Virus record (IMG/VR): IMGVR_UViG_3300032516_000001
Coordinates: 124,001-188,000 of that record
DNA: 64,000 nucleotides
Reading direction: 5' to 3' (one strand)
The notes beneath the pieces are model-generated. The model saw nothing but the letters and a program-made list of their open reading frames with translations. It was not told the origin of the DNA and made no database searches. The translations under genes were made by a program, and so were the position numbers. Positions 46,137 to 64,000 of the stretch are shown here, piece after piece (within the stretch, counting starts at the first letter, position 1; each line of letters begins with the position of its first letter).

Positions 46137-46778
46137 ATGCTGAATGGATTTACTTGGTGGAAATACGTTATGAAACCGGTCTTGATTAATGAAAAAGTAT
46201 TTGAAGGACTGGATCCATTGAGTTATACAATGGAACCAAAATTCGACGGCTATCGAATCCCTACTATTGCAGGATCTGATCGAGTTTTCACTTTTACCCG
46301 ACAGAAGAACCCGTTGAAACTCCCCGCGACTCTCCAAGATGAACTCAATAGCCTTAATCTACCGGCCGGCACAGTCCTTGATGGAGAAATCTGGAGTCCA
46401 GCTAAACGAGGAGGATGGGATAATCTTCCACAAGGACAATGTAAATTATCCTTTTGGGACGTAATCCGGGAAGGGACTAAAGACGTTTCAAGTGAGTCAA
46501 TCGAAACCCGTCGTCAAATTCTTACTAATTTACTGTCTAATTCTACCCCGAATATCATGCAAGCGACTGTGTATGCTGTGTCATTTGAAAATTTGCGAAT
46601 GCTCGAGCAACAGGCACGAGAAGTTAGAGATGGCCAGGCACTACGTTCCGGCTTCATTCATGGTGTTGTGTTGAAGCGAAACGGGTCACCACGACGAGAT
46701 CATGCATGTAGATCTGTCGAACATCCTGATTGGCTTAAAATTGTGTACCGTGATCTCTCCGGATGGGCGCCAAGATAA
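46137..46778 (+). CDS. ATP-dependent ligase-like nucleotidyltransferase domain with no OB domain
   Basis: Motif I EPKFDGYR, III VLDGEI, IIIa SFWDVI, IV HGVVLK, V WLKI; only 213 aa. Confidence 0.8.
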   Translation: MLNGFTWWKYVMKPVLINEKVFEGLDPLSYTMEPKFDGYRIPTIAGSDRVFTFTRQKNPLKLPATLQDELNSLNLPAGTVLDGEIWSPAKRGGWDNLPQGQCKLSFWDVIREGTKDVSSESIETRRQILTNLLSNSTPNIMQATVYAVSFENLRMLEQQAREVRDGQALRSGFIHGVVLKRNGSPRRDHACRSVEHPDWLKIVYRDLSGWAPR

Positions 46779-47062
46779 TTTTTATTCCTAAGTTAAATGT
46801 GACCAAGGATTACGCACCTGATACTATTGATGCTGCCATAATCGCTACCTTAAAAATGCTCTTTAGAGGCAAAGCCGTTGTATGGCAGGGTGCTAGAATG
46901 TATACGGCTGGTGGTACTACATGTATAAATGGGAAACCAGTTGGTGATATGGTGAGTGCCACATTCGTGTGGTTCACACAATACAGCACAGCTGACCCAT
47001 ATAAGAGTCATTGGGGGGAATCATCGTCTTCTGTTGAATTTCTTAGGAGACGATTTACTTAA
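46763..47062 (+). CDS. Hypothetical protein
   Basis: 99-aa ORF overlapping the end of the ligase-like gene. Confidence 0.45.
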   Translation: MGAKIIFIPKLNVTKDYAPDTIDAAIIATLKMLFRGKAVVWQGARMYTAGGTTCINGKPVGDMVSATFVWFTQYSTADPYKSHWGESSSSVEFLRRRFT

Positions 47063-47867
47063 TATCGGTCAAAATTTTCATGATATTCAAATTGAATTCT
47101 GGATCATATCTCCAATCGATAGTATTATTTACAAAGGAATGGATTACTTCTGATAATGGTAACGGTGAAGAAAATTCTATAGAGTTATTTAATTTCAAAC
47201 TTGGTATTAATCCATCATACATTATATATCCATCACTACCAATTACAGAAAATTTCCTTTCTTTACAGTTATGTCCGTTTCCAACTTTGATTGTGGCGTG
47301 AATCCCAACGAAATCTAACTCTAGAATATATATCTCTCCAGGATTTTTCTCCTCTTTAGTAATCTTAATTGAGTTTGGATAATTTTTAGTAACTCCAAAA
47401 CACATAGATAAATCATGTGGACCATAATCCAAAAGCGAAGAATATTCGCGGAACGGACCATGATTTAAACCGAATGATTCGATATTGAATGGGTGCTCCC
47501 AATTGGAAACCATGCTTCGTAATGCAACATAAGCCGGCGAAAATAGATGAGTATTATCAATTAAAATAGTTGTATTCTGCCTCTGCGCAGTATTAAAAAT
47601 AGCTTCGGCATCTCCTAGAGTCTCAGCGACTGGCTTTTCAAGTAGAACCGGTATCCCAGCCTCAAGAAAATGAGTGGCTATTTCCCAGTGAGTTGACGGC
47701 GGAGTAGCTATTATTACTTTATCTATTTTAGATATAATTTCACGGTAATCTGTAATCGGTCCCGTCTTGTCACATATAGCTACAAGCTCGGCGCTCGGGA
47801 CAGATTCGATAGTCTTTATGTAGTTCCTGCCCCAGGCCCCACACCCGACTAACCCCAATCTAATCAT
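47055..47867 (-). CDS. Gfo/Idh/MocA family oxidoreductase
   Basis: GLVGCGAWG, IATPPSTH, VLLEKP. Confidence 0.9.
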   Translation of the reverse strand: MIRLGLVGCGAWGRNYIKTIESVPSAELVAICDKTGPITDYREIISKIDKVIIATPPSTHWEIATHFLEAGIPVLLEKPVAETLGDAEAIFNTAQRQNTTILIDNTHLFSPAYVALRSMVSNWEHPFNIESFGLNHGPFREYSSLLDYGPHDLSMCFGVTKNYPNSIKITKEEKNPGEIYILELDFVGIHATIKVGNGHNCKERKFSVIGSDGYIMYDGLIPSLKLNNSIEFSSPLPLSEVIHSFVNNTIDWRYDPEFNLNIMKILTDIK

Positions 47868-50800
47868 TCAGCATATGCTTTTTCAGCCCATTTGAAGAAA
47901 CGGGTTAATCCCTCTCGTAATGAAATTTTCGGATTATATCCAATTTGACTCTGGGCTTTCGTGATATCTGGACAACGTCGATTCGGTTCATCAGCCGGAT
48001 AACTATCAGGATATTCGGCCACGTTATATTCTATTTTTCTATCCAATGCTCTTTCGATTTCTTTCACTAAATCAAGCACAGATATTTCGGGAGTTGGATT
48101 CCCAATATTATATGGTTCGCCAGGTACGCCATTAACCAACACCTGTAAGAACCCACGGATTGCATCCGTAGCATAACAGAACGTCCTGGTTTGATTACCA
48201 GTTCCATAAACTTGCAGAGGTTTCTTCTCTAAAACTTTGGCTCCAAAATTTGGCAAAACACGATAATCAGTCTTCTGCATACCCGGTCCATAACAATTAT
48301 GACACATGATTCCTAAATCGCCCCCAAAGAAATTTTCTGTTCCGGGAACCGTAAAATCATACACAAAACCATCAATGGTTTTGCGATCAATAGACTTAAT
48401 CTCCGCAAAAGCAATATCAGCATGGACGTCACTCCCATTCCTAGGAGAAAGCTCATGAAGTTTATCCACTTCAGTACCATTTACACCATGAACCTCAATT
48501 CGATGAGCCGTGACATAATTCTTGTGTTTGGCTGCTCTTGTTCTAAATGAGTGGACCGAACCAAGAAGCCCGAGGCGAAGAAGAAGAGCATTTAACCCCT
48601 GAATTACACCCCAATTTGAGTTATTAAAAAGAATAAACTTCCCAGTTGTTTTCGCGTCATGATTTCCATCCCCACACCAGAATCCATGAAGAAATTTTGA
48701 TATTCTATGTTTCGGTAATTTTAATACCCATCCTGGGACACACTTTGAACTTCCAGCCCCAGCCATGCCAAAGCTCTTGAAAAGTTCAACAAGGACTCTA
48801 GAATGAATAATCATAATAGGCGTTTTTGTCCTATCGATATTAATTAACGAATTTATACCAAATAACTCTTTAATGATGCGCGCCACTTTATCTAAATATT
48901 TTTTGTGTTTATCTGAATATTCAAGAGAATAAGATCCACCACTGTCACAAACATGACCATCAGCTAGGGTGTAGCCAAATAACCACAAAAGACTGTCAAT
49001 ATCCGAAATATAGTTACTGATAAATTTATCCGAACTTCTATAACATACAGATTCTTCCTTCACATGAGGAATTGATGCTGATTTAAAAATCCCAGCCGGA
49101 ATCCTATCATTTGAATCCCATTTTAAACAATTAGCAGAAAATAACCTTGATGCGACTCCGTAATCACCCGCTGCCTTTCTAAGAATGGGCGGACGGGATA
49201 AAATGACTTCTCTAATTACTTCCGAACGAAGAGATAAACCTTCATTTGGGATTTTGTCGGAAATGAAAAATGGAAGAAGATCGCTCTCTGGGATAGGCAA
49301 ACTCCGCGGAATCACGATTTTGTCACCAACATTCAAATCCTTCCCAGCTACAGCTCTGATTTCTCCATTTATAAAACGAAAAAGGTCATGATCCTCTGTA
49401 ACGGTAATAGACCTGCCCCACTTAGTATGGAAAGTAATAACTTCTTCGTTTACTTTGCGTCGAAGAATGGCCGATATAGAACGCATTATCACTCGCCCAT
49501 CAGTATTAAAAGACGGGACGGTAACTCCACCAGGAGATCCCCCAGTACGTTCATAGCACTTTTCAAAGCTTTCAAATAATAACTCTCCATCCTTTTCATA
49601 TAAAACTTTTTGATCCCCAGTCAAACAATTGAATGGACGGACTATCTTACCCTGCACCCCATAATGTTCATGGAAGATTTGAACAAGCGTCTCCCCCAAT
49701 CGCTTGCTTTCATCATAACAATTGCCGCACCAGACAGCTTTCCCATTACGACGAACACATATGATGTGGTTTTTCACATTGACACAATAAACACGCCCAT
49801 CATATTCATAACGTTTAATATTAGTTATTTTAGCATATCTCGGGCGTCTAATATTTACATGATAAAGACCTCTGACTGACTGACTTATGCAAGCAGCGTA
49901 ACCAACTCGTAGTGCTAATTCTTGTACATCATCAGCAAGTTTCTTAGACTTAGTGTAATAGATTATATGACCACCTTTCCTACCATTTTTTGCTTTTTTA
50001 ACGGTTCCATCTCCTAGTACCAAAGCATCAAGCAAAATTTTAGATTGACGAGGTGACAAATTCATATACTCACGTGGTACATATTTATCACCAGCTTTAC
50101 CAAGCGGTTTTAATAAATTAACCAAAAATTTACTACAAATTCTAAATTGATGATGATCTGAATCCATGTAATTTATACCGATACGATCCAGACAAGCAGA
50201 TATTTTTTTACGACCTTCAAGTTTAACTTGTGATATCAAGATATAATATCTTGATACATCATAAATTTTTCCATCTTCACTCATTTTAACAAAATGACAT
50301 CCACTCCGCTTTTCTTTGGTTTTTCTAGTATAAGCGCATCCTTCTGATATATAATAACCAAGAAATTCAAGCCAGTCATCCATACTTATTTTCTTCAAAT
50401 CTGGCCTAAATCGAGACGGATTTTCACTGAATTCCATCCATTTTTTCTCCGCTCCAGTAAAATTGGCCCCGGTCGGCACCCCCCAAGAGGGGCCGTATTT
50501 GATGTTACCAGCTTTGATAAATCGAAATTTCCCTATTTTATCTTTGACATATAAATTGTGATCTGGCGTAACATTTAAATCTGTTACTGTGCTAGAAAAT
50601 TGAACCATGTCACCTTTATGTTTGTACTCGATATATTCAGTCGGAACGTGATATTCAACTATTCCTTCAGGATTAAGTGTAGCAACACTAATTTCTTTTG
50701 TTAGTTTAGAAAACGATTCCCATCCGTTCTCAGTTAAAATCTCAGTTTTGTCGTCGTAACATGCCCGTTTGCCAAGAGAACTGACATTACCCCAATAGCT

Positions 50801-51301
50801 TTCAGCCGTCGGAACCCGTTTTGGATCCGGGTCCCCATAAATTTCACTGGAGCTAAAGAAAAGCAACTTAGCATTCGGTTGCCTTTTAGCTAATTCCAAA
50901 ACATTCGTTAACCCGGTGGTAGCGACCTGCAACGTCTCTAATGGGTATCTCCGATAATAGTAAGGACTGGCTATGCCGGCTGCATGTATTACAAAGTCCA
51001 CCGGTCTTTCTGGATAAAATGGTTTAATTATATCATGTTCAACAAATGCCATGTCCCGCGAAATAGGAACATCCTTACCTTTTTCGCCAGCAGTAATGAA
51101 ATTATCTAAAACAATGAGTTCACATAGCGGTTTCCCATTATCCCAGAATAAATTTTTGTTCAAATAAATAAAGACATCGCTGAAATATCTGCCGAGGAAC
51201 CCACGCCCACCGGTTATGAGTATTCTCTTTCCCGAGAACTCCCAAGCGAGATCGCCCAGGCTCTCAGCAATTTCTTCTATATCACTCTTCAATAAAAACA
51301 T
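47864..51301 (-). CDS. NAD-dependent epimerase/dehydratase (UDP-glucuronate decarboxylase-like) containing two inteins
   Basis: TGGRGFLG, HAAGIASP..Y, SSSEIYGDP, YWGNV..RA|CYDESKRLGE, RPFN|CYGP; the spliced product would be 354 aa. Confidence 0.9.
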   Translation of the reverse strand: MFLLKSDIEEIAESLGDLAWEFSGKRILITGGRGFLGRYFSDVFIYLNKNLFWDNGKPLCELIVLDNFITAGEKGKDVPISRDMAFVEHDIIKPFYPERPVDFVIHAAGIASPYYYRRYPLETLQVATTGLTNVLELAKRQPNAKLLFFSSSEIYGDPDPKRVPTAESYWGNVSSLGKRACYDDKTEILTENGWESFSKLTKEISVATLNPEGIVEYHVPTEYIEYKHKGDMVQFSSTVTDLNVTPDHNLYVKDKIGKFRFIKAGNIKYGPSWGVPTGANFTGAEKKWMEFSENPSRFRPDLKKISMDDWLEFLGYYISEGCAYTRKTKEKRSGCHFVKMSEDGKIYDVSRYYILISQVKLEGRKKISACLDRIGINYMDSDHHQFRICSKFLVNLLKPLGKAGDKYVPREYMNLSPRQSKILLDALVLGDGTVKKAKNGRKGGHIIYYTKSKKLADDVQELALRVGYAACISQSVRGLYHVNIRRPRYAKITNIKRYEYDGRVYCVNVKNHIICVRRNGKAVWCGNCYDESKRLGETLVQIFHEHYGVQGKIVRPFNCLTGDQKVLYEKDGELLFESFEKCYERTGGSPGGVTVPSFNTDGRVIMRSISAILRRKVNEEVITFHTKWGRSITVTEDHDLFRFINGEIRAVAGKDLNVGDKIVIPRSLPIPESDLLPFFISDKIPNEGLSLRSEVIREVILSRPPILRKAAGDYGVASRLFSANCLKWDSNDRIPAGIFKSASIPHVKEESVCYRSSDKFISNYISDIDSLLWLFGYTLADGHVCDSGGSYSLEYSDKHKKYLDKVARIIKELFGINSLINIDRTKTPIMIIHSRVLVELFKSFGMAGAGSSKCVPGWVLKLPKHRISKFLHGFWCGDGNHDAKTTGKFILFNNSNWGVIQGLNALLLRLGLLGSVHSFRTRAAKHKNYVTAHRIEVHGVNGTEVDKLHELSPRNGSDVHADIAFAEIKSIDRKTIDGFVYDFTVPGTENFFGGDLGIMCHNCYGPGMQKTDYRVLPNFGAKVLEKKPLQVYGTGNQTRTFCYATDAIRGFLQVLVNGVPGEPYNIGNPTPEISVLDLVKEIERALDRKIEYNVAEYPDSYPADEPNRRCPDITKAQSQIGYNPKISLREGLTRFFKWAEKAYAE
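48296..49627 (-). mobile_element. Intein 2 (444 aa) with a LAGLIDADG endonuclease
   Basis: Starts CLTGDQKV; TEDHDL; LFGYTLADG and FLHGFWCGDG; ends VYDFTV..IMCHN; +1 residue is Cys. Confidence 0.92.
49721..50761 (-). mobile_element. Intein 1 (347 aa) with a LAGLIDADG endonuclease
   Basis: Starts CYDDKTEILTENGW; block B TPDHNL; LAGLIDADG helices FLGYYISEG and LLDALVLGDG; ends VWCGN; +1 residue is Cys. Confidence 0.9.
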
Positions 51302-52519
51302 CTAACACTCCTTGAATTCCGGAATCGGAATTATGAACTTTCCGCCCTTTTGATGAAACGATTCGTTTTTCTGCATTATCGGATCAGCGAAATTCCAGGC
51401 CAAAATCAGCATGTAATTCGGGTTAAAACTAACGGCTCCAACACTAGACATGATCGGTATGTCAGTTCCAGGAATAAATTTGCCTTGTTTTAATGGACTA
51501 TCATCAATAATGCATTTTATATGATCAGAAGTCAACCTGAATTGATGAACTAAGGTCGTTGCTTTAGCAGGAGCACCGTATCCTATAACGGTCTTATTCC
51601 TTAATTTTAACTCATCTAATTTATTTGAGAGTTTAACTCCTAAATTAATGATTTTTGATTCAAATTCAGTGAAATTCAAATTCTTTTCCATTGATTCCGC
51701 AATTTCGACATTCTTCGAAATTGGACGCATGCCAAGATCAACATAACATCGAATCGATCCCCCATGAGTGTTGATGAAATCAACATCAAATAACCTCATC
51801 CCGTGAACTTTGAAGAATGAGATCAAAGGACTAATAGTGTGATATGACAAATGCTCATGGTAGATTGTATCAAATAGCAAATTCTTCAGCACATCAACTA
51901 AGTATGACACCTCGAATACAAACACACCATCTGGTTTGAGTAGTATTTTTACTCCTGACACAATATCGTGTAAATCATCGATATGAGCAAAAACGTTATT
52001 AGCTGTAATTGCATCTACCTGGCCATGATTTTCAACCATCATAGTGGCTAACTGACTATTGAAAAATTCTGGTAAAGTCATCAATCCATCACGGGTAGCC
52101 TGTCTAGCTATGGCAAAAGCCGGATCTACACCAAAAACAGACGCCCCAATATTATGCAAGCATTTTAAAAGTGTCCCATCATTGCTTCCGATATCTACTA
52201 CTGTAGATTGGTAACCAATCTTGAATCGATTGGCCAACATATCAGCATATGATTCAAAATGTTTAACAAACACCGGGCTCGTACCAGATACGTACACATA
52301 ATCTCTAAATAATCTTTCTGGGTCTACAATTATAGGTAATTGTACGTGCTTGCATTTGTCACATTGAACTAGGTATAACGGGAATTTTTCCTGATTTTTG
52401 GATTTTTCAGGATCGCGCAGTAACTCATTGGCAAGGGGTGTAGAATTGAGTTTGATTTTGGGGTCAAGCTGGTCGTGTCCACACAGTCTACAGTTAAGTC
52501 TAATATGATAATCAGCCAT
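51302..52519 (-). CDS. NDP-sugar C-methyltransferase (Zn-binding N-terminus, class I SAM)
   Basis: CRLCG..PLAN..YPL..C..C..VQL, DIGSNDG, IYHEH, HGGSIR, GYGAPAK, ILAWNF. Confidence 0.9.
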   Translation of the reverse strand: MADYHIRLNCRLCGHDQLDPKIKLNSTPLANELLRDPEKSKNQEKFPLYLVQCDKCKHVQLPIIVDPERLFRDYVYVSGTSPVFVKHFESYADMLANRFKIGYQSTVVDIGSNDGTLLKCLHNIGASVFGVDPAFAIARQATRDGLMTLPEFFNSQLATMMVENHGQVDAITANNVFAHIDDLHDIVSGVKILLKPDGVFVFEVSYLVDVLKNLLFDTIYHEHLSYHTISPLISFFKVHGMRLFDVDFINTHGGSIRCYVDLGMRPISKNVEIAESMEKNLNFTEFESKIINLGVKLSNKLDELKLRNKTVIGYGAPAKATTLVHQFRLTSDHIKCIIDDSPLKQGKFIPGTDIPIMSSVGAVSFNPNYMLILAWNFADPIMQKNESFHQKGGKFIIPIPEFKEC

Positions 52520-52552
52520 ATATGACTCTACTTCTTGTGATTTAGCTCTGTT

Positions 52553-53020
52553 TCAATACTTCTGTCGATTAGGGATCATGTCTTTTGTAATAAAACTAAC
52601 TCTTACCAAATCAGATTCATGGCTCTCGTGAGACCTAACATTCCTGGCCATAGTGATAAACGTAGTTTCTATCGGGAAATACATGGCATGTTCCATCATC
52701 GGTGGGGTGAAGAACATCTGTCCAGCCAAAAAAATCTGCGGTTTCGGTATTTCAATATCACCAATTTTTCTTTCAAAATATGTTATTCTACCTGATATTA
52801 TATATGCATAATGCATATCAGTTTTATGGTAGTGATTAGCACGGATAGTGTCGGCTTTACTAGTAATAACAGCTACGCTAGTAACCGGGCGTAAAATCAA
52901 ATTCTGTATAACTCCGGAGTCATTGATGAATGGCTGAGGTAATGGAACGAACCTTTCATTTGGCCAAATTCCACTATCTACGGCCGCAGTATATGCTTCG
53001 TGATCAATGCTACTGTTCAT
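52553..53020 (-). CDS. Cupin-fold sugar isomerase/epimerase-like protein
   Basis: RANHYHK..H....SG and PP...HA cupin motifs; located in the sugar cluster. Confidence 0.7.
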   Translation of the reverse strand: MNSSIDHEAYTAAVDSGIWPNERFVPLPQPFINDSGVIQNLILRPVTSVAVITSKADTIRANHYHKTDMHYAYIISGRITYFERKIGDIEIPKPQIFLAGQMFFTPPMMEHAMYFPIETTFITMARNVRSHESHESDLVRVSFITKDMIPNRQKY

Positions 53021-55113: not shown

Positions 55114-55122
55114 GATATACCT

Positions 55123-56085: not shown

Positions 56086-56093
56086 TTTATCAC

Positions 56094-57275: not shown

Positions 57276-57276
57276 T

Positions 57277-58584
57277 TCATTTTCCCTGTTTCAGTGCCTG
57301 CATTTTGAATTCCCACGCGTTATAGTGGCCCAATCTAGAAATATCAACAAACCCAATTTTTCTTAACAGTGACTCTAAGGATGACTCGGTGTATCCCCAT
57401 AAATGAAAATCGGCGTCATAAGTATTTCCACGCGTTCCCCAAATACATGTTGCCCATTCATCAACCATCCCATCAGCAATAATCCTCTTTAATGCGAATT
57501 CCATATCAGTTACCATTATATATAACGATCCACCAGGTCGTAGTATGCGTAAACACTCATTTAGAACTTTCTCGCCAGCCTCGGCTGACAAATGATTGAT
57601 CAGATGGATCATTTTAATCTTATCGGCGTGTCCATCGTGAAGTGGAATAATACCTTTGCTAAGATCACATACAATATCAACCCCTGGAATTGCCCTAACA
57701 TCTACATTGGGATGATAAACATCAGCAGAACCGCCACCCCCTAATTCGACCCACGTCGATTGCCCACACGTAGAACATGTCGGGCCAACACCCCCTGGTG
57801 GCGGCATCGGACCAATTGCTTGATACTGTCGTACGTCCATACTCCGCTTTACATCAACTTGGCTGGAGTACATCTCATCATCTTTGATAAATTTTGCCCA
57901 CATATAAGAATTACCATTGAAAATCCTGTAATGTTCGAGTTTCAATCCAAGCAGGGCTTGTAACTGTTCTATTGTATACCCTCTATTGTACGGACCTTCG
58001 TTAGTAAGTGCATTCTCATAAGGATAGTAAACTGTCGTATAAACCATGCAGAGAAATGTGCCACCGGGTTTAAGACATCGTTTAAATAATTCAACTACAT
58101 ATTGAACTTTTCCCGGTTGTATAGCATGCAAAACCCCATCCAAAAGTATTAAATCAAACATTCCTAACTGATTAATATCATCATATTCTTTAAGCAAAAC
58201 AGCTTTTGATGGATAACCTTCTAAAATTTTCGAGGTTAACTGCACATTTGAAGGAGTTATATCGACAGCAATAACATCCGCACCAGCTTGTGACATATAA
58301 AGTGAATCAACACCCATGCCACAGCCAAAATCCAAAACCCGCAAGCCTTTAAGATTTATAGCTAAAAGTTCTTCATAATAAATCTCACCTGTAAGAACTT
58401 TGTCCCAACGCATTCTGTTACGGAATTCCCAGTGTTCTTTAACATGTCGCTTTGTATCTTCGATATTATTAAGTGCGTCACTAGTTTTCTGAGCTGGTCC
58501 ATCATCCCAAAAACACGCGTCCCAATATGCTATGGAATCCCGACTGATTTGCGAATTTTCGTTCTTCATCGCATGGCCTTCCAT
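57277..58584 (-). CDS. Protein with two class I SAM methyltransferase domains
   Basis: VLDFGCGMG in domain 1; CSTCG linker; VELGGG..LRPGG in domain 2. Confidence 0.82.
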   Translation of the reverse strand: MEGHAMKNENSQISRDSIAYWDACFWDDGPAQKTSDALNNIEDTKRHVKEHWEFRNRMRWDKVLTGEIYYEELLAINLKGLRVLDFGCGMGVDSLYMSQAGADVIAVDITPSNVQLTSKILEGYPSKAVLLKEYDDINQLGMFDLILLDGVLHAIQPGKVQYVVELFKRCLKPGGTFLCMVYTTVYYPYENALTNEGPYNRGYTIEQLQALLGLKLEHYRIFNGNSYMWAKFIKDDEMYSSQVDVKRSMDVRQYQAIGPMPPPGGVGPTCSTCGQSTWVELGGGGSADVYHPNVDVRAIPGVDIVCDLSKGIIPLHDGHADKIKMIHLINHLSAEAGEKVLNECLRILRPGGSLYIMVTDMEFALKRIIADGMVDEWATCIWGTRGNTYDADFHLWGYTESSLESLLRKIGFVDISRLGHYNAWEFKMQALKQGK

Positions 58585-58586
58585 CT

Positions 58587-59333
58587 TTACACAAATTCAT
58601 TCGGAATGCATAGCAGATCAACACTGATAGGCGCACCGTGAGGTGAAATACTTGCTATGTCGCTAGGCGTAGTTAAATTATTGGGGACCCTTGATATCGT
58701 TGTTACTGAATAATTCTCATTTAAAAGAAGTTTTCCGAGTTCAAATGAAGAATCTCCGACTTTATCCATGGTATAATTACATACTTCAACTACCATAGAT
58801 GGCCTATATTTACGCAAACATTCTAAAGAACCACGTAATACGCGCAATTCCCACCCATCAACGTCAATTTTGATGAAAGTTGGCTCTATATTTAGAATTG
58901 ATACTATTTGATCTGTTGTTAACACCTCTACTGTAAATGGCTTTGCTTCCTTGAGTTCTACATAGGGTAAAAAATATTGGTTGTTCTTATTCAATTCATG
59001 ATCCGGTGATAATAATGTCCAATGTCCTTGATGAACTACACTAATTGGGTTGCATGTCCGGCAATCGGATAAAGCTGCCCTGATGCATGTAACATTATTA
59101 TATGTGAGATTTTGTACACGATTAACTAAACATGCGAATGCTTTAGGACCCGGTTCTACGGCTACGACTTTTCCATCGTGGGAAGCTTCTATAGCCAACG
59201 GAATGGTTAAATCTCCTACGTTAGCCCCTATATCAATGATTACACATTTACCAAATCTTTTGATATAATTACGAAATGATGACAACAAATCAGTCTCATT
59301 GTAATTAGAAGCTATTTCACTGATAATATTCAT
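58587..59333 (-). CDS. FkbM family methyltransferase
   Basis: IDIGANVG, AVEP, FIKIDVDGWE..VLRG. Confidence 0.85.
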   Translation of the reverse strand: MNIISEIASNYNETDLLSSFRNYIKRFGKCVIIDIGANVGDLTIPLAIEASHDGKVVAVEPGPKAFACLVNRVQNLTYNNVTCIRAALSDCRTCNPISVVHQGHWTLLSPDHELNKNNQYFLPYVELKEAKPFTVEVLTTDQIVSILNIEPTFIKIDVDGWELRVLRGSLECLRKYRPSMVVEVCNYTMDKVGDSSFELGKLLLNENYSVTTISRVPNNLTTPSDIASISPHGAPISVDLLCIPNEFV

Positions 59334-59347
59334 AGTCTACTATCCAA

Positions 59348-60436
59348 TCATGGCGACTCTGGCCATATTTCACATCCCCAGTATTCTAAGTCACTAACGT
59401 CTATTGATTTTACCGGATGATTTCGCTCTTCTCTCCATAAATCTAAACGCGATGCGAGTTCATCCATAATGTAATTATTTTTAGCATGACATATTTTTGA
59501 ACGGTCATTTGACGCGTGTATTTCATTTCTACGCATCTCGTTGTAGTTCATTCCGTCTCTAAAACTCCACCTTCCTTCAATGCGTTCCTCCATGCCTCCC
59601 CATGGCAAAGATCCACAAATCCAGCGTGGATTTGGAACGATCGGGTCTTTCATTCTAGGTTCCCACCACAAATTGAGTCCAAGACCTTCAATCCTTATTG
59701 CAAAATCAGTATCCATCGGACCTTTCCCCCGTTCCAAACGTTCATCAAGGCCGCCCAATCTCCACAAGGTGTCACGCCTCATAGATTCATTTTTAACATG
59801 AATCCAACTAGGCGCCTTGGTACCCGGAACATTCCCAGACATAAGACGTCGGGAGTCTTGAATTTGATCCTGCCCGTGAACTTTTAAGGATGGAATAATC
59901 GAAGAATCGAAAGGTCCATCCTGGAATATAAACATTTCTGGTAAAATTCCGCCCTCGATTACTGGCGATGTAGTAACACAATGACCCGAATATCCAGATA
60001 AAGATGAATGGGCGTATTCCTTAGAAAAATCATAATCTCTCAGTAATTTTAATTTTGGAAGATCCGTATGCAGATATGGACCGATTAAATACAGATTATC
60101 TCTTTGTGAATGGTATTCAAGATGAGATTCGATCCACTCAGGATGACAATAACAATAATCCTGTAATATTAGGATGTATTCACCACGCGCAAGAGCAAAA
60201 GCAGTGTTCCACGCAGAACAGAACGTAGTCCATTTACCATTACGTCTATGTTCTGGTACGTGAATGCACTTAATTCCATATTTATTCGCTAAATCAATCA
60301 CTTCGGAATGACGCTTTTCATAACGGTTATCACATATGATTAATTCGAAATCTTTAAAATTCTGATCTCGCATGCCAGCAAGAGTAATATCTAAACCGCC
60401 AGGTCTAAATGTAGAAACGCATACCGAAACTTTCAT
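59348..60436 (-). CDS. GT2-family glycosyltransferase
   Basis: VSVCVSTFR, ELIICD, N.AFALARGEYILILQDY, GGLDE. Confidence 0.82.
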   Translation of the reverse strand: MKVSVCVSTFRPGGLDITLAGMRDQNFKDFELIICDNRYEKRHSEVIDLANKYGIKCIHVPEHRRNGKWTTFCSAWNTAFALARGEYILILQDYCYCHPEWIESHLEYHSQRDNLYLIGPYLHTDLPKLKLLRDYDFSKEYAHSSLSGYSGHCVTTSPVIEGGILPEMFIFQDGPFDSSIIPSLKVHGQDQIQDSRRLMSGNVPGTKAPSWIHVKNESMRRDTLWRLGGLDERLERGKGPMDTDFAIRIEGLGLNLWWEPRMKDPIVPNPRWICGSLPWGGMEERIEGRWSFRDGMNYNEMRRNEIHASNDRSKICHAKNNYIMDELASRLDLWREERNHPVKSIDVSDLEYWGCEIWPESP

Positions 60437-60457
60437 GTGATTACTATACTATACGAA

Positions 60458-61150
60458 TTAAGTTATTGGGAAATAGAGGCTATGGGAAATAGGACCACAT
60501 GGAATAGTTGAAATCTCATTATATTTTACTCCAAATTTCCCACCAATAAGAGAATCTCGAATTTCTTCATAAATAGATGCACGTTTAAAAACATGGTTCT
60601 CAACTTGGATTTTCGGATGAAATTCAGATATAAGATTTTTTGATCCTTTTAAAACTTCTACCTCAGCCCCCTCAACATCTAATTTCATCCAATCCACGCG
60701 CGATAGATTAACCGAAGTCATCCATGAATCGATGATAGTCACCGGAATGATATAACCATCACAGATCCCGGGATCCATGGAGAAAAATTCTTGTGTCATA
60801 GTATGCAACCAACCATCACGATCATAGACTCCGGATTCAATGACACAACATTTATCGGACCACCCATTCAATGCTAAAGTTTTACGCAGTATATTTGCCT
60901 CTGATTCATCACCAGTTCCTTGAGGAGACCAGGCCCATACGTAAGAAGCTCCTTGCGCTAAAGCTGTAACTGTATATGAACCATAGGCTGCTCCGACGTC
61001 GAGGACGACATCCCCCGGGAGTATATGCCAATACGCCTCTCTAACAGACGCCTCATCTTCAAATGTGTACCAAGTCGGGTGTTTTGGAATATTATCTAAA
61101 CAAACGATTTTGTATGATTTTCCCCGAAACGTAAACTCTTTAATAGACAT
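60458..61150 (-). CDS. FkbM family methyltransferase (tandem paralog A)
   Basis: VLDVGAAYGSY, MKLDVEGAE.EVLKG. Confidence 0.85.
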   Translation of the reverse strand: MSIKEFTFRGKSYKIVCLDNIPKHPTWYTFEDEASVREAYWHILPGDVVLDVGAAYGSYTVTALAQGASYVWAWSPQGTGDESEANILRKTLALNGWSDKCCVIESGVYDRDGWLHTMTQEFFSMDPGICDGYIIPVTIIDSWMTSVNLSRVDWMKLDVEGAEVEVLKGSKNLISEFHPKIQVENHVFKRASIYEEIRDSLIGGKFGVKYNEISTIPCGPISHSLYFPIT

Positions 61151-61154
61151 GGAA

Positions 61155-61874
61155 TTAGATTATTGGGAAGTATAGACTATGGGAAATGAAATGATATGAA
61201 ACAGTCGAGATTTCCCTATATCTTATCCCCAGTTTTCCTTCAACAAGAAGATCATAAACCTCTTGATACAAAGATGCGCGTCTAAAAAGGTGATTTTCAA
61301 CGAGAATCTTTGGACAAAAATTAGATATTAGATTCTTAGCGCCTTTTATAACTTCTCCTTCGGCCCCCTCAACGTCTAACTTCATCCAATCTACGCGCGA
61401 TAGATTAACCGAAGTCATCCATGAATCGATCGTAGTTACCGGAATAACATCCAGAGGTAATCCGTTTGCCGGCCCATCCGGAATTGCGGGAGAGTCAGCA
61501 TAAAATTCTTGTGTATCAACGTTTAACCAACCATCACGATCATAGACTCCAGATTCAATAACACAACATTTATCAGCCCATCCATTTAGCGCTAAAGTCT
61601 CACGCATCAACTGTGCCCCGGTATCAATGACCCCTCTTCCCGTATAAGGAGACCAAGCCCATACATAAGAGGCCCCCTGAGACAAAGCCGGCATCGTGTA
61701 TGAGCCGTAGGAAGCCCCGATATCGAAAACAACATCATCCGGGAGTATGTGCCAATTCCTATCTCTAACGGATGACTCATCTTCGAATGAATACCAACTC
61801 GGGTGGTCCTTGGTTTCTGTAGTATAAGCGATCTTATACATCTTTCCTCGAAACGTGAGTTCTTTTATGAGCAT
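61155..61874 (-). CDS. FkbM family methyltransferase (tandem paralog B)
   Basis: FDIGASYGSY, MKLDVEGAE.EVIKG. Confidence 0.85.
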   Translation of the reverse strand: MLIKELTFRGKMYKIAYTTETKDHPSWYSFEDESSVRDRNWHILPDDVVFDIGASYGSYTMPALSQGASYVWAWSPYTGRGVIDTGAQLMRETLALNGWADKCCVIESGVYDRDGWLNVDTQEFYADSPAIPDGPANGLPLDVIPVTTIDSWMTSVNLSRVDWMKLDVEGAEGEVIKGAKNLISNFCPKILVENHLFRRASLYQEVYDLLVEGKLGIRYREISTVSYHFISHSLYFPII

Positions 61875-61882
61875 ATGGCTAC

Positions 61883-64000
61883 CTAACTAGCTGCTTTATA
61901 CATAGGAACGATGTTTTGTTCGACATCCTTAATAATGTCGTATAACATTTTCTCCCAATCAACAGCAAGAGAATCCCATCCGAAATTATTCTTGGCGTAT
62001 TGTTGCAGGGATATTCTATCTTCGTTCCCAAATTTAGTCATTGCCTGTATAACAGCATTGGTCCATTTGTCTTGATAATCTTCTGAAAGCCAATCACCAG
62101 GAATCATATAACCACGCGGACCAACCGTTTCGTTCAAAGCGGCGATCGGTGACGTCACCATTCGTAATCCGGCCGCTTGTGCTTCCATAGCAGTAATACA
62201 GCTTGATTCGGAAAACCATGTCGAATATGCCCAAACACCTGAAGAAAGAAACTCTTTAGCTAATTCTATTTGGTTAATTCTGTCTTTGAAAAATATCCCG
62301 TATTTTTTACCATCTTCAAGTTGTTGCTTTAAACGAGCAATCAAAGCAAGTTGACCACGATCATTCATACTCGTGGCTGAAACCTCCCAATTTTTAAATC
62401 CATAAAATACATGTAATTCCGCATCAACAATTTTTTCACGAATCCTGGGCCAACAACACATAGCAACTTCAAGACCACGATCCGGGCTTGAACTATAAAC
62501 GGCTTTATGCGGGTTACGATCAATTTTGAAATTAAACCTATCTAAATCTATACCATTACGGGTAGTAATAACCTGAGATGGATGAACAAATTTGTGAACA
62601 GACAAGAAGAAATCGTGGTGCCACTCACTAAGAACCAAGAATCGGTCGATTTTCAACGCTCGTTCATGAGTAAGGGCGCCTCCAAGATGAATATCATGTA
62701 CCCAACAAAACGATACCTTATATTTGATATTATATTCACTATCCATTATATGTGGACGGCGTGAAGTAATGAATACGTCGCATTCTATGTTTCTACAATT
62801 AGTATGATGTATGTAATCAACACCATCATACTTCCCCTCAATTCCTAAACAATCCCCGTAAACACGTACTTTGTGTCCTTTAGCTGCCAGTCTCTTTCCC
62901 ATCTCGATGACAGCAGTTTCTGATCCGCCAATACCACCATCACGCATAGTTGCCGGCGTCCATGGTTCACAACTATTTCCTATATAGAATACTATATCCA
63001 GTTTTGGTGCGACAGAAGTTTCTAATTTTGGCGTAACAGGAGTATCTGACTGTGCGACGCTCGATCCAGACGTAGTTGAACAAACTTTAGGAATAGTCTC
63101 AGACTCACCTACAAACGAAATAGATGCTCTTCCATGAATAACGTTTATGACGAAACTTCTTACTTGTTCATCGATTACATTGCTATTCAATAACGTATTC
63201 AGACCCTGCTCTATTTTCTGTCGTGCAAAGAATTCTTCATATAATTTTTTGTTCAAAAGTAAACTGTCATCAGGTTTAATCAATAGTGCCTTATTCACAC
63301 TTTCAAGAGCACCGCCTACATCTCCTATTTTATTTAGAGCTAGATTTAGATAACGGTGAATATCAAAATCTCGTTCGATTGGATTAACAAACAGAATAGT
63401 TTTTGTAGGCGGAAGCTGTAGTCCTAATTTAGCAAAATGAACGCTTTTCTCCCAATTTCGGTGTTCATTTGGTCCGCCCCGCTGTGCTAGATAATAATAA
63501 CTCTTGGCTAGAGAAAAATAAGCTTCGGCCCAACCCTCGCGCACAGTTAACGCTTTAAGTGCCCATTCGACAGCATTATCATAGTCACCCCTATTTTGAT
63601 AATGCTTGGCAATCTCGAGACATGCTAAAAATTTTTCATCGTCCCATCCTGATAATTCAACATAACGCTTATGAAATTTGATAGAACTTTCTATATCACC
63701 ATTGTTTGCATACTCCAACCCAAGGTAATATAATTGTCGTATATCTGATTCGCCAACCTTTGCAAAATGAGCCTTGAGAATTCTTAAGTTTCTGCCGGAC
63801 TCAATAACCTTGCCCGATTGCATTCTGCGATGGATAATTGTTATACTGTCTTTTTGGTCCATCCATGTAGATCGTTTTGGTACTAACACTTCATGGACCG
63901 GGCCAGTCCATTTAAAAGCTTCTTTAGGAGTTACAATTCTTTCTCGATAGTGGTAGCAAGTAATATTGCCTTTTTCATCATGAGCATACTCATACGGTAA
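61883..64000 (-). CDS. GT2 + TPR + GT4 glycosyltransferase (5' end outside the window)
   Basis: The frame stays open to 64000 (..YRERIV..FKWTGPVHEVL), a SunS-like GT2 signature; TPR helices; GGSE..RNGID..SSPDRGL..E.SCI.AMEAQAAG GT4 domain. Confidence 0.88.
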   Translation of the reverse strand, partial: LPYEYAHDEKGNITCYHYRERIVTPKEAFKWTGPVHEVLVPKRSTWMDQKDSITIIHRRMQSGKVIESGRNLRILKAHFAKVGESDIRQLYYLGLEYANNGDIESSIKFHKRYVELSGWDDEKFLACLEIAKHYQNRGDYDNAVEWALKALTVREGWAEAYFSLAKSYYYLAQRGGPNEHRNWEKSVHFAKLGLQLPPTKTILFVNPIERDFDIHRYLNLALNKIGDVGGALESVNKALLIKPDDSLLLNKKLYEEFFARQKIEQGLNTLLNSNVIDEQVRSFVINVIHGRASISFVGESETIPKVCSTTSGSSVAQSDTPVTPKLETSVAPKLDIVFYIGNSCEPWTPATMRDGGIGGSETAVIEMGKRLAAKGHKVRVYGDCLGIEGKYDGVDYIHHTNCRNIECDVFITSRRPHIMDSEYNIKYKVSFCWVHDIHLGGALTHERALKIDRFLVLSEWHHDFFLSVHKFVHPSQVITTRNGIDLDRFNFKIDRNPHKAVYSSSPDRGLEVAMCCWPRIREKIVDAELHVFYGFKNWEVSATSMNDRGQLALIARLKQQLEDGKKYGIFFKDRINQIELAKEFLSSGVWAYSTWFSESSCITAMEAQAAGLRMVTSPIAALNETVGPRGYMIPGDWLSEDYQDKWTNAVIQAMTKFGNEDRISLQQYAKNNFGWDSLAVDWEKMLYDIIKDVEQNIVPMYKAAS

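What the first reader, a model, noticed from the sequence alone, without database searches (positions are those of the whole stretch)
47055..64000. 17-kb-plus nucleotide-sugar, methylation and glycosyltransferase cluster: probable virion-glycan pathway with a branched sugar
Seen: a UDP-GlcA decarboxylase-like enzyme, NDP-sugar dehydrogenase, C-methyltransferase, cupin, Gfo/Idh/MocA reductase, GDP-mannose 3,5-epimerase-like SDR, four further methyltransferase genes (three FkbM and one with two class I domains), and three glycosyltransferase genes (five GT domains, one GT2-TPR of the SunS/flagellin-GT type). Established: C-methyltransferases act on 4-keto NDP-sugars (for example noviose and mycarose pathways), and GT2-TPR enzymes glycosylate proteins. 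Inference: dehydrogenase, then decarboxylase, C-methylation and reduction would give a C-methyl-branched pentose, further O-methylated and attached to virion proteins (the Thr-rich sheath and collagen-like protein are candidates) or to the host surface.
Basis: partly seen in the sequence, partly recalled or inferred. Interest (0 to 1): 0.6.

Follow-up and report, generated by a model that had tools for sequence, protein, structure and literature searches.

The report
Huge-phage glycan cluster with intein-split decarboxylase

Summary
They lie on a 241.6-kb contig of a contractile-tailed huge phage.

New findings:
1. The UDP-glucuronate-decarboxylase (UXS) gene carries two LAGLIDADG inteins, at the YxxxK catalytic motif and at the FN|YGP motif. 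Relatives show all four states: no intein, either one, or both.
2. The order cupin, 3-C-methyltransferase-like enzyme, UXS, Gfo/Idh/MocA oxidoreductase is a fixed four-gene module. It recurs in related huge-phage contigs and in at least 48 bacterial and archaeal genome loci from many phyla. I found no paper describing it.
3. The cupin model matches only cupins that act on NDP-4-keto sugars.
4. All products are soluble, and the contig has no lipid-carrier machinery. The large GT2-TPR-GT4 enzyme is nearest to the protein/peptide glycosyltransferases GmaR and SunS.
5. A 3,961-residue Thr-rich collagen-like fibre gene lies about 11 kb upstream on the same strand. Two related phages show the same linkage.

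Best reading: a cytoplasmic system that glycosylates virion protein. It would use a UDP-GlcA-derived C-methyl pentose, a GDP-mannose-3,5-epimerase product and O-methylation. The chemistry and the acceptor are inferred, not shown.

The parts
47055..47867 (-). Gfo/Idh/MocA NAD(P)-dependent oxidoreductase, 270 aa. Last gene of the four-gene sugar module and the predicted keto-reductase.
   Evidence: PF01408 2e-18. PDB 3c1a 9e-30. Found directly downstream of UXS in phage and bacterial relatives.
47864..51301 (-). UDP-glucuronate decarboxylase (UXS/ArnA-type extended SDR) precursor, 1145 aa, interrupted by two inteins. Exteins are residues 1-180, 528-558 and 1003-1145 (354 aa in total).
   Evidence: The exteins tile human UXS1 without a gap. 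The motif is S-S-E rather than the dehydratase D-E, and YxxxK is kept. The same protein occurs in three assemblies.
49721..50761 (-). Intein 1, 347 aa, inserted directly before the catalytic Cys-Tyr-Asp-Glu-Ser-Lys (YxxxK) motif. It carries a LAGLIDADG endonuclease domain.
   Evidence: It has Cys1, block B TxxH at residue 65, a C-terminal Asn and a +1 Cys. PF14528 hit. The site is empty in L011, P0002, P0003 and P0005, and occupied in P0006, P0026, P0052 and Trichodesmium P0030.
48296..49627 (-). Intein 2, 444 aa, inserted between Phe-Asn and Tyr-Gly-Pro of the substrate-binding motif. It has two LAGLIDADG motifs.
   Evidence: It has Cys1, TxxH at residue 77, a C-terminal His-Asn and a +1 Cys. 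PF14890, TIGR01445 and TIGR01443 hit it. The site is empty in L011, P0006, P0026 and P0052, and occupied in P0002, P0003, P0005 and P0030.
51302..52519 (-). SAM-dependent NDP-sugar C-methyltransferase of the TylC3/MtmC/TcaB9 family, 405 aa.
   Evidence: Methyltransf_13 (zinc domain), _23 and _14. MtmC 4rv9 4e-85; TcaB9/KijD1 about 2e-58.
52553..53032 (-). Small cupin, 155-159 aa. Predicted epimerase or 3,4-ketoisomerase acting on an NDP-4-keto sugar.
   Evidence: 329 homologues, many with Cupin_2. Invariant His/Asp/Glu cluster. AF2 pLDDT 92.6. Top Foldseek hits are CapF, FdtD, QdtA, FdtA, RmlC, ChmJ and EvaD.
53017..55113 (-). Two-domain glycosyltransferase, GT2 (N-terminal) + GT4/GT1 (C-terminal), 698 aa, soluble.
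   Evidence: PF00535, PF00534 and PF13692. No hydrophobic span typical of a membrane anchor. The GT4 part is conserved in L006, L008 and L011.
55123..56085 (-). GDP-mannose 3,5-epimerase-like SDR, 320 aa. Predicted to give GDP-L-galactose or GDP-L-gulose.
   Evidence: Arabidopsis GME 2c59 2e-92 over the full length.
56094..57275 (-). NDP-sugar 6-dehydrogenase, 393 aa, most like UDP-glucose 6-dehydrogenase. Predicted supplier of UDP-GlcA.
   Evidence: Three UDPG_MGDP_dh domains. TIGR03026 143 bits, below its cut-off. PDB 3vtf 9e-22 against GDP-Man DH 1.6e-9.
57277..58584 (-). Protein with two class I SAM methyltransferase domains, 435 aa. The second domain resembles the oligosaccharide O-methyltransferase MftM.
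   Evidence: Two stretches of Methyltransf_23/_11. NF041255 MftM 1.3e-12 at residues 304-349.
58587..59333 (-). FkbM-family methyltransferase 1, 248 aa.
   Evidence: PF05050 7e-18.
59348..60436 (-). Single-domain GT2 glycosyltransferase, 362 aa.
   Evidence: PF00535 7e-11. One of only four GT2 domains on the contig.
60458..61874 (-). Two tandem FkbM-family methyltransferase paralogues (60458-61150 and 61155-61874), 66% identical to each other.
   Evidence: PF05050. Pairwise blastp. One orthologue in L011.
61883..64000 (-). GT2-TPR-GT4 three-module glycosyltransferase. The gene continues to window-equivalent 64363 (826 aa). It is the most conserved GT of the phage core.
   Evidence: Pfam on the full gene, L002:883-3363. 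GT2 domain: GmaR 5.6e-18, SunS 4e-8. TPR at 207-291: 3e-19 to consensus TPR proteins. 55-60% identical orthologues in L006, L011 and L008. Full-length homologue beside a podovirus capsid gene.

Best explanation
This is a phage-encoded, cytoplasmic glycosylation system of a contractile-tailed huge phage.

Step 1, sugars (inferred from families and conserved gene order). The dehydrogenase oxidises UDP-glucose to UDP-glucuronate. [quoted passage not shown] C3 is most likely, by homology. The small cupin epimerises or isomerises the keto sugar. The Gfo/Idh/MocA enzyme reduces the keto group, giving a UDP-C-methyl-pentose. In parallel, the GDP-mannose-3,5-epimerase homologue supplies an L-series hexose.

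Step 2, transfer (inferred). Five soluble GT domains in three proteins build the glycan. The GT2-TPR-GT4 enzyme has a GT2 domain nearest to the protein/peptide glycosyltransferases GmaR and SunS, and its TPR module is of a kind that binds proteins. I propose that it starts the glycan on a protein.

Step 3, trimming (inferred). Four methyltransferase genes (three FkbM, one with two domains) O-methylate the glycan.

Acceptor (inferred, least certain). The most likely acceptor is the 3,961-residue collagen-like fibre encoded about 11 kb upstream on the same strand. More than half of its 1,189 G-X-Y triplets end in Thr. The parallel is O-glycosylation of the GXT repeats of Bacillus BclA.

Shown directly: the gene families, the intactness of the genes, the intein boundaries and the synteny.
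For: - Family assignments.
- The UXS exteins tile UXS1 exactly, and the protein has the decarboxylase S-E motif rather than the dehydratase D-E motif.
- The fixed order cupin, C-MT, UXS, Gfo occurs in related phage contigs L006, L007, L008 and L011, and in at least 48 of the 80 best genome loci across Actinomycetota, Myxococcota, Acidobacteriota, Rhodospirillales, Prochlorococcus and others.
- The cupin model (pLDDT 92.6) matches only NDP-4-keto-sugar cupins at the top of the hit list.
- UDP-4-keto-xylose released by a UXS-type enzyme is an accepted precursor of a C-branched sugar (EvdS6, PMC10338323).
- No cluster protein has a membrane span. The 241-kb contig has no polytopic membrane ORF, no Bac_transf and no thymidylate-synthase-type hydroxymethylase.
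- The GT2 domain is nearest to GmaR and SunS, and clear TPRs follow it.
- All four GT2 domains of the contig lie in this one co-directional block, including an MT-GT2-TPR gene directly downstream of the collagen-like gene.
- The collagen-like fibre: 1,189 triplets, mostly GAT, GVT, GPQ, GSP and GPT; PF01391; PHROG tail-fibre families.
- Giant collagen-like ORFs also sit just upstream of the cluster in L011 and L007.
- A full-length GT2-TPR-GT4 homologue follows the major capsid gene in a complete 42.6-kb podovirus, with further GTs and methyltransferases after it.
- Virus-encoded multi-domain GT plus methyltransferase enzymes that decorate virion proteins are known (PBCV-1 A064R/A061L, PMC9614988). 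So is mycobacteriophage virion glycosylation (Freeman 2023, cited in PMC12619734).
Against: - There are no expression, proteomic or glycan data.
- Sequence cannot tell whether this UXS releases the 4-keto sugar or reduces it to UDP-xylose. The EvdS6 paper says the structures do not explain this difference.
- The methylated carbon is unknown. The same family includes 5-C-methyltransferases (from memory, NovU).
- If the cupin is a 3,4-ketoisomerase, the order of steps and the product would differ.
- The NDP-sugar dehydrogenase scores below its NCBIfam cut-off, and the related phages lack it.
- The contig is only about 57% complete. Membrane machinery or a hydroxymethylase could lie in the missing part, or the host could supply it.
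- The acceptor rests on gene linkage and analogy only. The nine ORFs between the collagen-like gene and the cluster have no family hits, and blast finds no counterparts of them in the flanks of the related loci held.
Confidence: 0.55

Rival explanations
1. Host-surface remodelling. The phage expresses the cluster during infection or carriage to change a host surface glycoconjugate such as LPS, capsule, S-layer or flagellin. This would block superinfection or alter grazing and recognition. The virion itself is not glycosylated.
For: - The four-gene module is common in bacterial polysaccharide-type loci next to GTs.
- GmaR, the nearest solved relative of the GT2 domain, modifies a host flagellin.
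- From memory: cyanophages are known to carry LPS-type gene clusters, and temperate phages to carry serotype-converting GTs. Serotype conversion is also noted in PMC12619734.
- The contig is incomplete, and the host could supply the membrane steps.
Against: - The contig has no priming phosphoglycosyl transferase, flippase, polymerase or any polytopic membrane ORF, and every cluster protein is soluble.
- The block is co-directional with, and linked to, fibre genes in three related phages.
- A homologue sits inside the structural module of a podovirus.
Confidence: 0.2
2. The system is the same, but the chemistry differs. The C-methyltransferase methylates C5 of the UDP-4-keto-pentose, as in noviose biosynthesis. 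That would rebuild a 4-keto-6-deoxyhexose skeleton, and the end product would be a 6-deoxyhexose-type sugar rather than a branched pentose. Alternatively, the cupin first moves the keto group to C3, so that C2 or C4 is methylated.
For: - Enolate chemistry next to a 4-keto group allows attack at C3 or C5.
- The cupin fold matches 3,4-ketoisomerases as well as it matches epimerases.
- Gfo/Idh/MocA enzymes often act at C3 of sugars. The best NCBIfam hit is a UDP-GlcNAc 3-dehydrogenase, well below its cut-off.
Against: - The closest solved homologues of the C-MT are all 3-C-methyltransferases (MtmC, TcaB9, KijD1).
- A decarboxylate-then-remethylate route to a 6-deoxyhexose would be wasteful compared with a 4,6-dehydratase.
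Confidence: 0.15
3. DNA hypermodification. The GTs attach the sugars to modified bases of the phage genome to evade restriction.
For: - Virus-encoded GTs that decorate DNA with diverse glycans are known (Pyle 2024, cited in PMC12619734).
- This phage invests in DNA modification, with three Mom-domain genes.
Against: - The contig has no thymidylate-synthase-family hydroxymethylase.
- The conserved GT carries TPRs, and its GT2 domain is nearest to protein/peptide GTs.
- As far as I know, multi-step O-methylated glycans with C-methyl sugars are not a feature of DNA glycosylation.
Confidence: 0.05
4. A recently captured bacterial polysaccharide locus that is carried passively and is decaying or unexpressed.
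For: Bacterial homologues of the core module are abundant.
Against: - All 13 ORFs are intact and tightly packed.
- GC is 39.5%, close to the contig's 42.3%.
- The best C-MT identity is 52%, and it is to another phage. The phage branches are long, and no close bacterial donor appears.
- The core is retained, with flanking Mom, DUF7487 and ligase-like genes, in several diverged phage contigs.
Confidence: 0.03

Closest known systems
Giant-virus glycan gene clusters (chlorovirus PBCV-1 A064R/A061L; the 38-kb CroV cluster; Mimivirus fibril glycans)
   Same: The virus encodes its own nucleotide-sugar enzymes, including a UDP-Glc 6-dehydrogenase in CroV. It also encodes multi-domain GTs and sugar O-methyltransferases that decorate virion proteins in the cytoplasm (PMC9614988).
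   Different: The host here is a bacterium and the virus is a tailed phage. The sugars differ: a C-methyltransferase/UXS module and a GME homologue. The GT carries TPRs. No glycan structure is known.
Mycobacteriophage virion glycosylation (Freeman et al. 2023)
   Same: Phage-encoded GTs next to structural genes modify capsid and tail proteins (cited in PMC12619734). Here the homologous GT also sits next to a capsid gene in a podovirus.
   Different: Those phages carry one or two GTs and use host sugars (from memory). This cluster has 13 genes, including a sugar-synthesis pathway and methyltransferases.
BclA exosporium glycoprotein of Bacillus anthracis and B. cereus
   Same: A collagen-like region of GXT triplets carries O-linked, methylated, unusual sugars (Daubenspeck 2004, cited in PMC9614988; PMC6222408). 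The phage fibre is dominated by GAT, GVT and GPT triplets.
   Different: BclA has tens of triplets and the phage protein has 1,189. The enzymes are unrelated (rhamnose and anthrose operons). Glycosylation of the phage protein is untested.
C-branched deoxysugar pathways of actinomycete antibiotics (mycarose via TylC3/MtmC, kijanose via KijD1, TcaB9; noviose via NovU/NovW/NovS)
   Same: A SAM-dependent C-methyltransferase of the same family (4e-85 to MtmC) acts on a 4-keto NDP-sugar. A cupin epimerase and a keto-reductase partner it.
   Different: The keto sugar there comes from a dTDP-glucose 4,6-dehydratase. Here a UDP-GlcA decarboxylase stands in that position, so the substrate would be a pentose. 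The reductase is Gfo/Idh/MocA, not an SDR.
EvdS6 / ArnA / RsU4kpxs: UXS-family enzymes that release UDP-4-keto-pentose
   Same: They belong to the same extended-SDR decarboxylase family. In everninomicin the released 4-keto-xylose is proposed to be C-branched (PMC10338323).
   Different: [quoted passage not shown] Here the partner is a SAM C-methyltransferase, and the enzyme carries two inteins.
Two-intein UDP-glucuronate decarboxylase of Trichodesmium erythraeum IMS101 and single-intein cyanobacterial UXS
   Same: The same two insertion sites are used, and both inteins carry LAGLIDADG domains. Intein 1 is 51-56% identical to the cyanobacterial ones.
   Different: The exteins are only 39-41% identical, so this is a different UXS subfamily. 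The host is a phage, and the +1 residue of intein 2 is Cys rather than Thr.

Membership tests
UXS/ArnA-type UDP-glucuronate decarboxylase (extended SDR) | Full-length colinearity with a characterised UXS once the insertions are set aside | tested here: met
   The N-, middle and C-exteins align to human UXS1 2b69 at 25-168, 169-199 and 200-331. In each of the three searches UXS1 is the top hit.
UXS/ArnA-type UDP-glucuronate decarboxylase (extended SDR) | Catalytic Ser/Thr ... Tyr-x-x-x-Lys, with Ser-Glu (not the Asp-Glu of 4,6-dehydratases) after the first catalytic residue | tested here: met
   Ser-Ser-Ser-Glu at residues 150-153 and Tyr-Asp-Glu-Ser-Lys at 529-533 are read directly from the translation and alignment. 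What the motif means is from established knowledge of RmlB versus UXS/ArnA.
UXS/ArnA-type UDP-glucuronate decarboxylase (extended SDR) | Decarboxylase activity, and whether the 4-keto product is released | not testable with these tools
   This needs an enzyme assay. The literature says structure does not predict product release (PMC10338323).
Intein (class 1, with LAGLIDADG homing endonuclease) | In-frame insertion absent from close homologues, with contiguous exteins | tested here: met
   The intein-free allele L011:11761-12807 (348 aa, 71% extein identity) and the single-intein alleles align flush at both junctions.
Intein (class 1, with LAGLIDADG homing endonuclease) | Splicing residues: Cys/Ser at position 1, block B TxxH, C-terminal Asn, and a +1 Cys/Ser/Thr | tested here: met
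   Both inteins have Cys1, TxxH (residue 65 and residue 77), a terminal Asn and a +1 Cys. Intein 1 has Gly rather than His at the penultimate position. TIGR01445 and TIGR01443 hit intein 2.
Intein (class 1, with LAGLIDADG homing endonuclease) | Endonuclease domain with LAGLIDADG motifs | tested here: met
   PF14528 has two stretches. The motif scan finds two motifs in intein 2 and one in intein 1. A second, Leu-Val-Leu-Gly-Asp-Gly-like motif in intein 1 is visible in the translation.
Intein (class 1, with LAGLIDADG homing endonuclease) | Actual protein splicing and homing | not testable with these tools
   This needs expression of the precursor.
NDP-sugar C-methyltransferase (TylC3/MtmC/TcaB9/KijD1) | Three-part architecture: N-terminal zinc domain, class I SAM domain, C-terminal Methyltransf_14 domain | tested here: met
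   PF08421 2.8e-17, PF13489 1.3e-13, PF08484 8e-41. Full-length match to MtmC at 4e-85.
NDP-sugar C-methyltransferase (TylC3/MtmC/TcaB9/KijD1) | Methylation at C3 of a 4-keto sugar | not testable with these tools
   Regiochemistry needs NMR of the product.
GDP-mannose 3,5-epimerase | Full-length similarity to characterised GME well above that to other SDRs | tested here: met
   2c59 scores 2e-92 (313 bits) against 1e-33 for the next family. Catalytic Cys and Lys were not inspected.
Cupin acting on NDP-4-keto sugars (RmlC / FdtA / CapF-C type) | Small jelly-roll cupin fold matching these enzymes | tested here: met
   AF2 pLDDT 92.6, pTM 0.86. Foldseek probability is 1.00 to CapF, FdtD, QdtA, FdtA, RmlC, ChmJ and EvaD, with TM 0.5-0.65 normalised to the query. 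Sequence-level support is weak (Cap5F E 0.23).
Protein/peptide glycosyltransferase of the GmaR / SunS GT2 type with TPR | GT2 catalytic domain nearest to GmaR/SunS, followed by TPR repeats | tested here: met
   GmaR 5.6e-18 and SunS 3.8e-8 over residues 4-160. TPR region 207-291 scores 3e-19 to consensus TPR proteins. The individual Pfam TPR hits are below their cut-offs.
Protein/peptide glycosyltransferase of the GmaR / SunS GT2 type with TPR | A protein acceptor | not testable with these tools
   This needs co-expression and mass spectrometry.
Lipid-carrier-dependent O-antigen / capsule locus | Priming phosphoglycosyl transferase and a Wzx/Wzy or ABC export system | tested here: not met
   The 241-kb contig has no PF02397 hit. 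No ORF has more than four hydrophobic spans, and the one with four is the tail sheath. Caveat: the contig is about 57% complete, and PF00953 and the flippase families were not searched by profile.
Phage DNA glycosylation system | Pyrimidine hydroxymethylase (thymidylate-synthase family) that supplies the acceptor base | tested here: not met
   No PF00303 hit on the contig. The same completeness caveat applies.

The most novel reading that the evidence does not exclude
The fixed four-gene operon (cupin, C-methyltransferase, UXS, Gfo/Idh/MocA) encodes an undescribed route from UDP-glucuronate to a C-methylated pentose. The route is widespread in bacteria, from actinomycetes to Prochlorococcus. 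A lineage of huge phages has adopted it to coat a collagen-like fibre of about 4,000 residues with methylated glycans, a phage counterpart of the BclA nap or of Mimivirus fibrils. Two mobile inteins at the catalytic motifs of the committed enzyme may gate the pathway.
Probability: 0.3. Interest if true: 0.8.

Novelty: new variant of a known kind. Interest (0 to 1): 0.62.

Why it matters
Virus-encoded glycosylation is well described for giant viruses of eukaryotes. For phages it is documented mainly in mycobacteriophages, which carry one or two transferases.

- **Scale.** This would be a complete phage system for making and attaching sugars, on the scale of a giant-virus cluster. It is tied to a collagen-like fibre about 4,000 residues long.
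- **An unstudied pathway.** The work exposes a conserved four-gene sugar module found across many bacterial phyla. I found no description of it. The module could be tested in culturable carriers such as Nonomuraea fuscirosea or Actinoplanes italicus, and it might reveal a new branched sugar.
- **Intein spread.** The double intein in a sugar-metabolism enzyme occurs in all four occupancy states among relatives. Intein 1 is more conserved than the exteins between the phage and cyanobacteria. This makes it a clean natural case of intein spread outside the usual replication genes.

Tried and rejected
- Megablast of the whole cluster against the phage collection found no match.
- Pfam sheath (PF04984) and terminase (PF03237) profiles found nothing on the contig. 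The sheath was then identified by tblastn.
- PHROG and Pfam scans of the nine ORFs between the cluster and the collagen-like gene were empty, apart from one weak hit of unknown function. These ORFs have no counterparts in the flanks of the related loci I hold.
- The promoter and terminator scan of 45000-64000 was no better than shuffled sequence (54 found against 61.8 expected; 15 against 13.1). It gives no operon boundaries.
- No tRNA genes lie in the window.
- The cupin alone had no Pfam, NCBIfam or PDB sequence hit. A family profile gave only weak hits. The fold search resolved it.
- Literature searches for the four-gene module, and for inteins in sugar epimerases/decarboxylases, found nothing specific. 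Two searches failed on term syntax.
Habitat, expression and population-level intein presence could therefore not be examined, and read laying was not used.
- The listing of cluster members gave no organism names.
- The careful tree search did not finish. The quick IQ-TREE result is used, and the monophyly of the phage C-MTs is unresolved.
- I did not run complex prediction. Gene neighbourhood and analogy alone did not justify it.
- I never assembled the spliced (intein-free) UXS sequence or sent it to any search or fold. The exteins were searched piece by piece by reference. Only a pooled GC count used the three pieces together.

Full report
**Where the window lies.** The window is bases 124001-188000 of a 241,648-bp IMG/VR virus record that CheckV rates 57% complete. 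The virus is a contractile-tailed huge phage.
- The 1,567-aa ORF at 18219-22922 matches annotated tail sheaths of Tunturiibacter phage Tunturi_5, Bacillus phage G and cluster C mycobacteriophages. Its best match is a 485-kb uncultured phage.
- The C-methyltransferase has its best phage hits in uncultured phage genomes of 634-735 kb.
- The window also holds HNH, GIY-YIG and Mom genes.
- It has no tRNA gene.

From 47055 to 64363 there are 13 intact minus-strand ORFs with gaps of -16 to +33 bp. The last gene runs 363 bp past the window end. In window order from 47055, which is the reverse of the order of transcription, they are:
- Gfo/Idh/MocA.
- A UXS-type SDR.
- A TylC3/MtmC-type C-methyltransferase, 4e-85 to MtmC.
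- A cupin.
- A GT2+GT4 protein.
- A GDP-mannose-3,5-epimerase homologue, 2e-92.
- An NDP-sugar dehydrogenase nearest to UDP-Glc 6-dehydrogenases.
- A protein with two methyltransferase domains, the second of which resembles the oligosaccharide methyltransferase MftM.
- Three FkbM methyltransferases, two of them tandem paralogues at 66% identity.
- A GT2.
- A GT2-TPR-GT4 protein of 826 aa.

The same 1145-aa UXS protein, with largely the same neighbouring genes, occurs in a 323-kb ENA contig and in a Logan contig.

The 'UDP-GlcA decarboxylase-like' gene is 1145 aa long because it holds two inteins.
- Intein 1 (residues 181-527, window 49721-50761) sits directly before the catalytic Tyr-x-x-x-Lys.
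- Intein 2 (residues 559-1002, window 48296-49627) sits between Phe-Asn and Tyr-Gly-Pro.
- The three exteins (180 + 31 + 143 aa) align to human UXS1 at 25-168, 169-199 and 200-331 with nothing missing.
- Both inteins have Cys1, a block B TxxH, a terminal Asn, a +1 Cys and LAGLIDADG motifs.
- Relatives show every occupancy state. An intein-free 348-aa allele occurs in a related 428-kb phage contig (L011). Alleles with intein 1 only and with intein 2 only also occur. Both inteins are present in Trichodesmium erythraeum, whose UXS is 1080 aa.
- Where intein 2 is present in the close relatives (window, P0002, P0003, P0005), the residue after it is Cys; in Trichodesmium it is Thr. Empty alleles have Val, Ile or Thr there.
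- Intein 1 is 51-56% identical between the phage and cyanobacterial enzymes, although their exteins are only 39-41% identical. This pattern is what a mobile element is expected to show.

The exteins were searched separately by reference.

**A conserved four-gene sugar module.** The order cupin, C-MT, UXS, Gfo/Idh/MocA is kept in several places.
- It occurs in related phage contigs L006/L007 (65 and 247 kb; the protein also occurs on a 367-kb contig), L011 (428 kb) and L008. L008 is a 10.9-kb contig binned with a Methylobacter MAG. The same flanking ligase-like, Mom and DUF7487 genes accompany the module in the phage contigs long enough to show them.
- It also occurs, without inteins, in bacterial contigs.
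- A cupin-profile scan of species-representative genomes found 213 relatives. In at least 48 of the best 80 loci all four genes are present, with the same order seen wherever I inspected the coordinates. These come from Nonomuraea, Actinoplanes, Micromonospora, Myxococcota, Acidobacteriota, Comamonadaceae, many marine Rhodospirillales, Prochlorococcus/Synechococcus, Verrucomicrobiota and a Nitrosopumilales archaeon. Most of the other 32 loci are cut by contig ends.

The cupin family has an invariant His/Asp/Glu cluster. Its confident AF2 model (pLDDT 92.6) matches CapF, FdtA/QdtA/FdtD/WlaRB ketoisomerases and RmlC/EvaD/ChmJ epimerases, all of which act on NDP-4-keto sugars. The UXS has Ser-Glu where 4,6-dehydratases have Asp-Glu. 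It should therefore decarboxylate rather than dehydrate.

Taken together, the simplest chemistry runs as follows:
1. UDP-GlcA is converted to a UDP-4-keto-pentose.
2. A carbon next to the keto group is C-methylated.
3. The sugar is epimerised or isomerised.
4. The keto group is reduced.

A UXS-family enzyme that releases UDP-4-keto-xylose for C-branching has a precedent in EvdS6. [quoted passage not shown] I found no paper on the present module. The regiochemistry and the release of the keto sugar remain inferences.

**Core and accessory genes.** Related phages share the GT2-TPR-GT4 gene (55-60% identity), one or two GT4 genes and the four-gene module. One FkbM orthologue occurs in L011. The GME homologue, the dehydrogenase, the double methyltransferase, FkbM1 and the single GT2 are extras of this phage.

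**Not a recent capture.**
- Cluster GC is 39.5%, against 42.3% for the contig.
- The best C-MT identity is 52%, to another phage.
- In a quick maximum-likelihood tree the four phage C-MTs lie on long branches inside a well-supported clade of soil and freshwater bacteria, with no close donor. Their monophyly is unresolved.

**What is glycosylated?** Several lines point to a protein made in the cytoplasm.
- No cluster protein has a membrane span.
- The contig has no polytopic membrane ORF, no Bac_transf and no thymidylate-synthase-type hydroxymethylase. One caveat is that about 43% of the genome is missing.
- The GT2 domain of the conserved three-module GT is nearest to GmaR, the Listeria flagellin O-GlcNAc transferase (5.6e-18), and to SunS, a peptide S-glycosyltransferase (4e-8). 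Clear TPRs follow it.
- All four GT2 domains of the contig lie in one co-directional block.
- At the upstream end of that block is a 3,961-residue collagen-like protein (contig 199684-211566, window-equivalent 75684-87566). It has 1,189 G-X-Y triplets, mainly GAT, GVT, GPQ, GSP and GPT, and it hits Pfam Collagen and PHROG tail-fibre families.
- An MT-GT2-TPR gene follows the collagen-like gene directly.
- Related phages L011 and L007 have collagen-like ORFs of 2,381 and 2,214 aa just upstream of their clusters.
- In a complete 42.6-kb podovirus, a full-length homologue of the GT follows the major capsid gene, with more GTs and methyltransferases behind it.

Thr-rich collagen repeats are the O-glycosylation sites of Bacillus BclA (Daubenspeck 2004, cited in PMC9614988). 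Giant viruses use multi-domain GT plus methyltransferase enzymes on virion proteins. I therefore favour virion glycosylation, with the collagen-like fibre as the prime acceptor, at about 0.55. Host-surface remodelling stands at about 0.2 and DNA glycosylation at about 0.05.

**Limits.** A second fold job was unavailable. Consensus scans gave no promoter or terminator information. The host is unknown, and the Methylobacter bin is only a weak hint.

**Verdict.** The cluster is a new variant of a known kind, virus-encoded virion glycosylation. It contains an apparently undescribed, widely distributed sugar module and a double-intein enzyme.

Noticed in passing
window 26039-27109 (-): A 356-aa protein matches the Volactin family (PF25216, E 1.5e-65). 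It is an actin-like protein encoded by a huge phage.
   Followed up: no
G000 contig 199684-211566 (-), window-equivalent 75684-87566; partly in L002:14684-19000: A 3,961-residue collagen-like protein has 1,189 G-X-Y triplets, mostly GAT, GVT, GPQ, GSP and GPT, and a non-collagen C-terminal domain of about 120 aa. It hits PHROG tail-fibre families.
   Followed up: partly
L002:12800-14677 (-), window-equivalent 73800-75677: A 625-aa protein combines a methyltransferase, a GT2 and TPR repeats.
   Followed up: partly
window 7125-8924 (-), 9723-11345 (+), 39244-40818 (-): Three Mom-domain proteins (DNA-modification family) are present. Two are fused to HNH endonuclease domains. Mom and DUF7487 genes are syntenic in related phages.
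   Followed up: no
window 18219-22922 (-): A 1,567-aa tail sheath is far longer than usual. It is 11.7% Thr and has apparently repeated inserted domains. Its best match is a 485-kb uncultured phage.
   Followed up: partly
window 12025-12597 (-): A small 190-aa collagen-like ORF has a 105-residue G-X-Y run rich in Thr (PF01391). It lies in a locally GC-rich stretch of 48.7%.
   Followed up: no
window 23065-24396 (-): A free-standing GIY-YIG-type homing endonuclease. Together with the HNH genes and the two inteins, it shows a heavy load of mobile endonucleases.
   Followed up: no
window 31485-32801 (-): An adenylosuccinate lyase homologue (Lyase_1 + ADSL_C). It is an auxiliary purine-metabolism gene.
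   Followed up: no
window 49721-50761 (intein 1), compared with P0030 and P0052: Intein 1 is more similar between the phage and cyanobacterial UXS proteins (51-56%) than the exteins are (39-41%). This suggests intein transfer between UXS subfamilies.
   Followed up: partly
window 46137-46778 (+): A 213-aa nucleotidyltransferase resembles the adenylation domain of ATP-dependent DNA ligases and capping enzymes. It converges on the end of the cluster and is syntenic in related phages.
   Followed up: no
L008 / L013 (DATBQC010000445.1) and L012 (JANJTH010000500.1): Short contigs that carry the phage-type cluster or cupin are binned in Methylobacter and Planctomycetota MAGs. They are probably mis-binned phage fragments and at best a weak clue to the host.
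   Followed up: no
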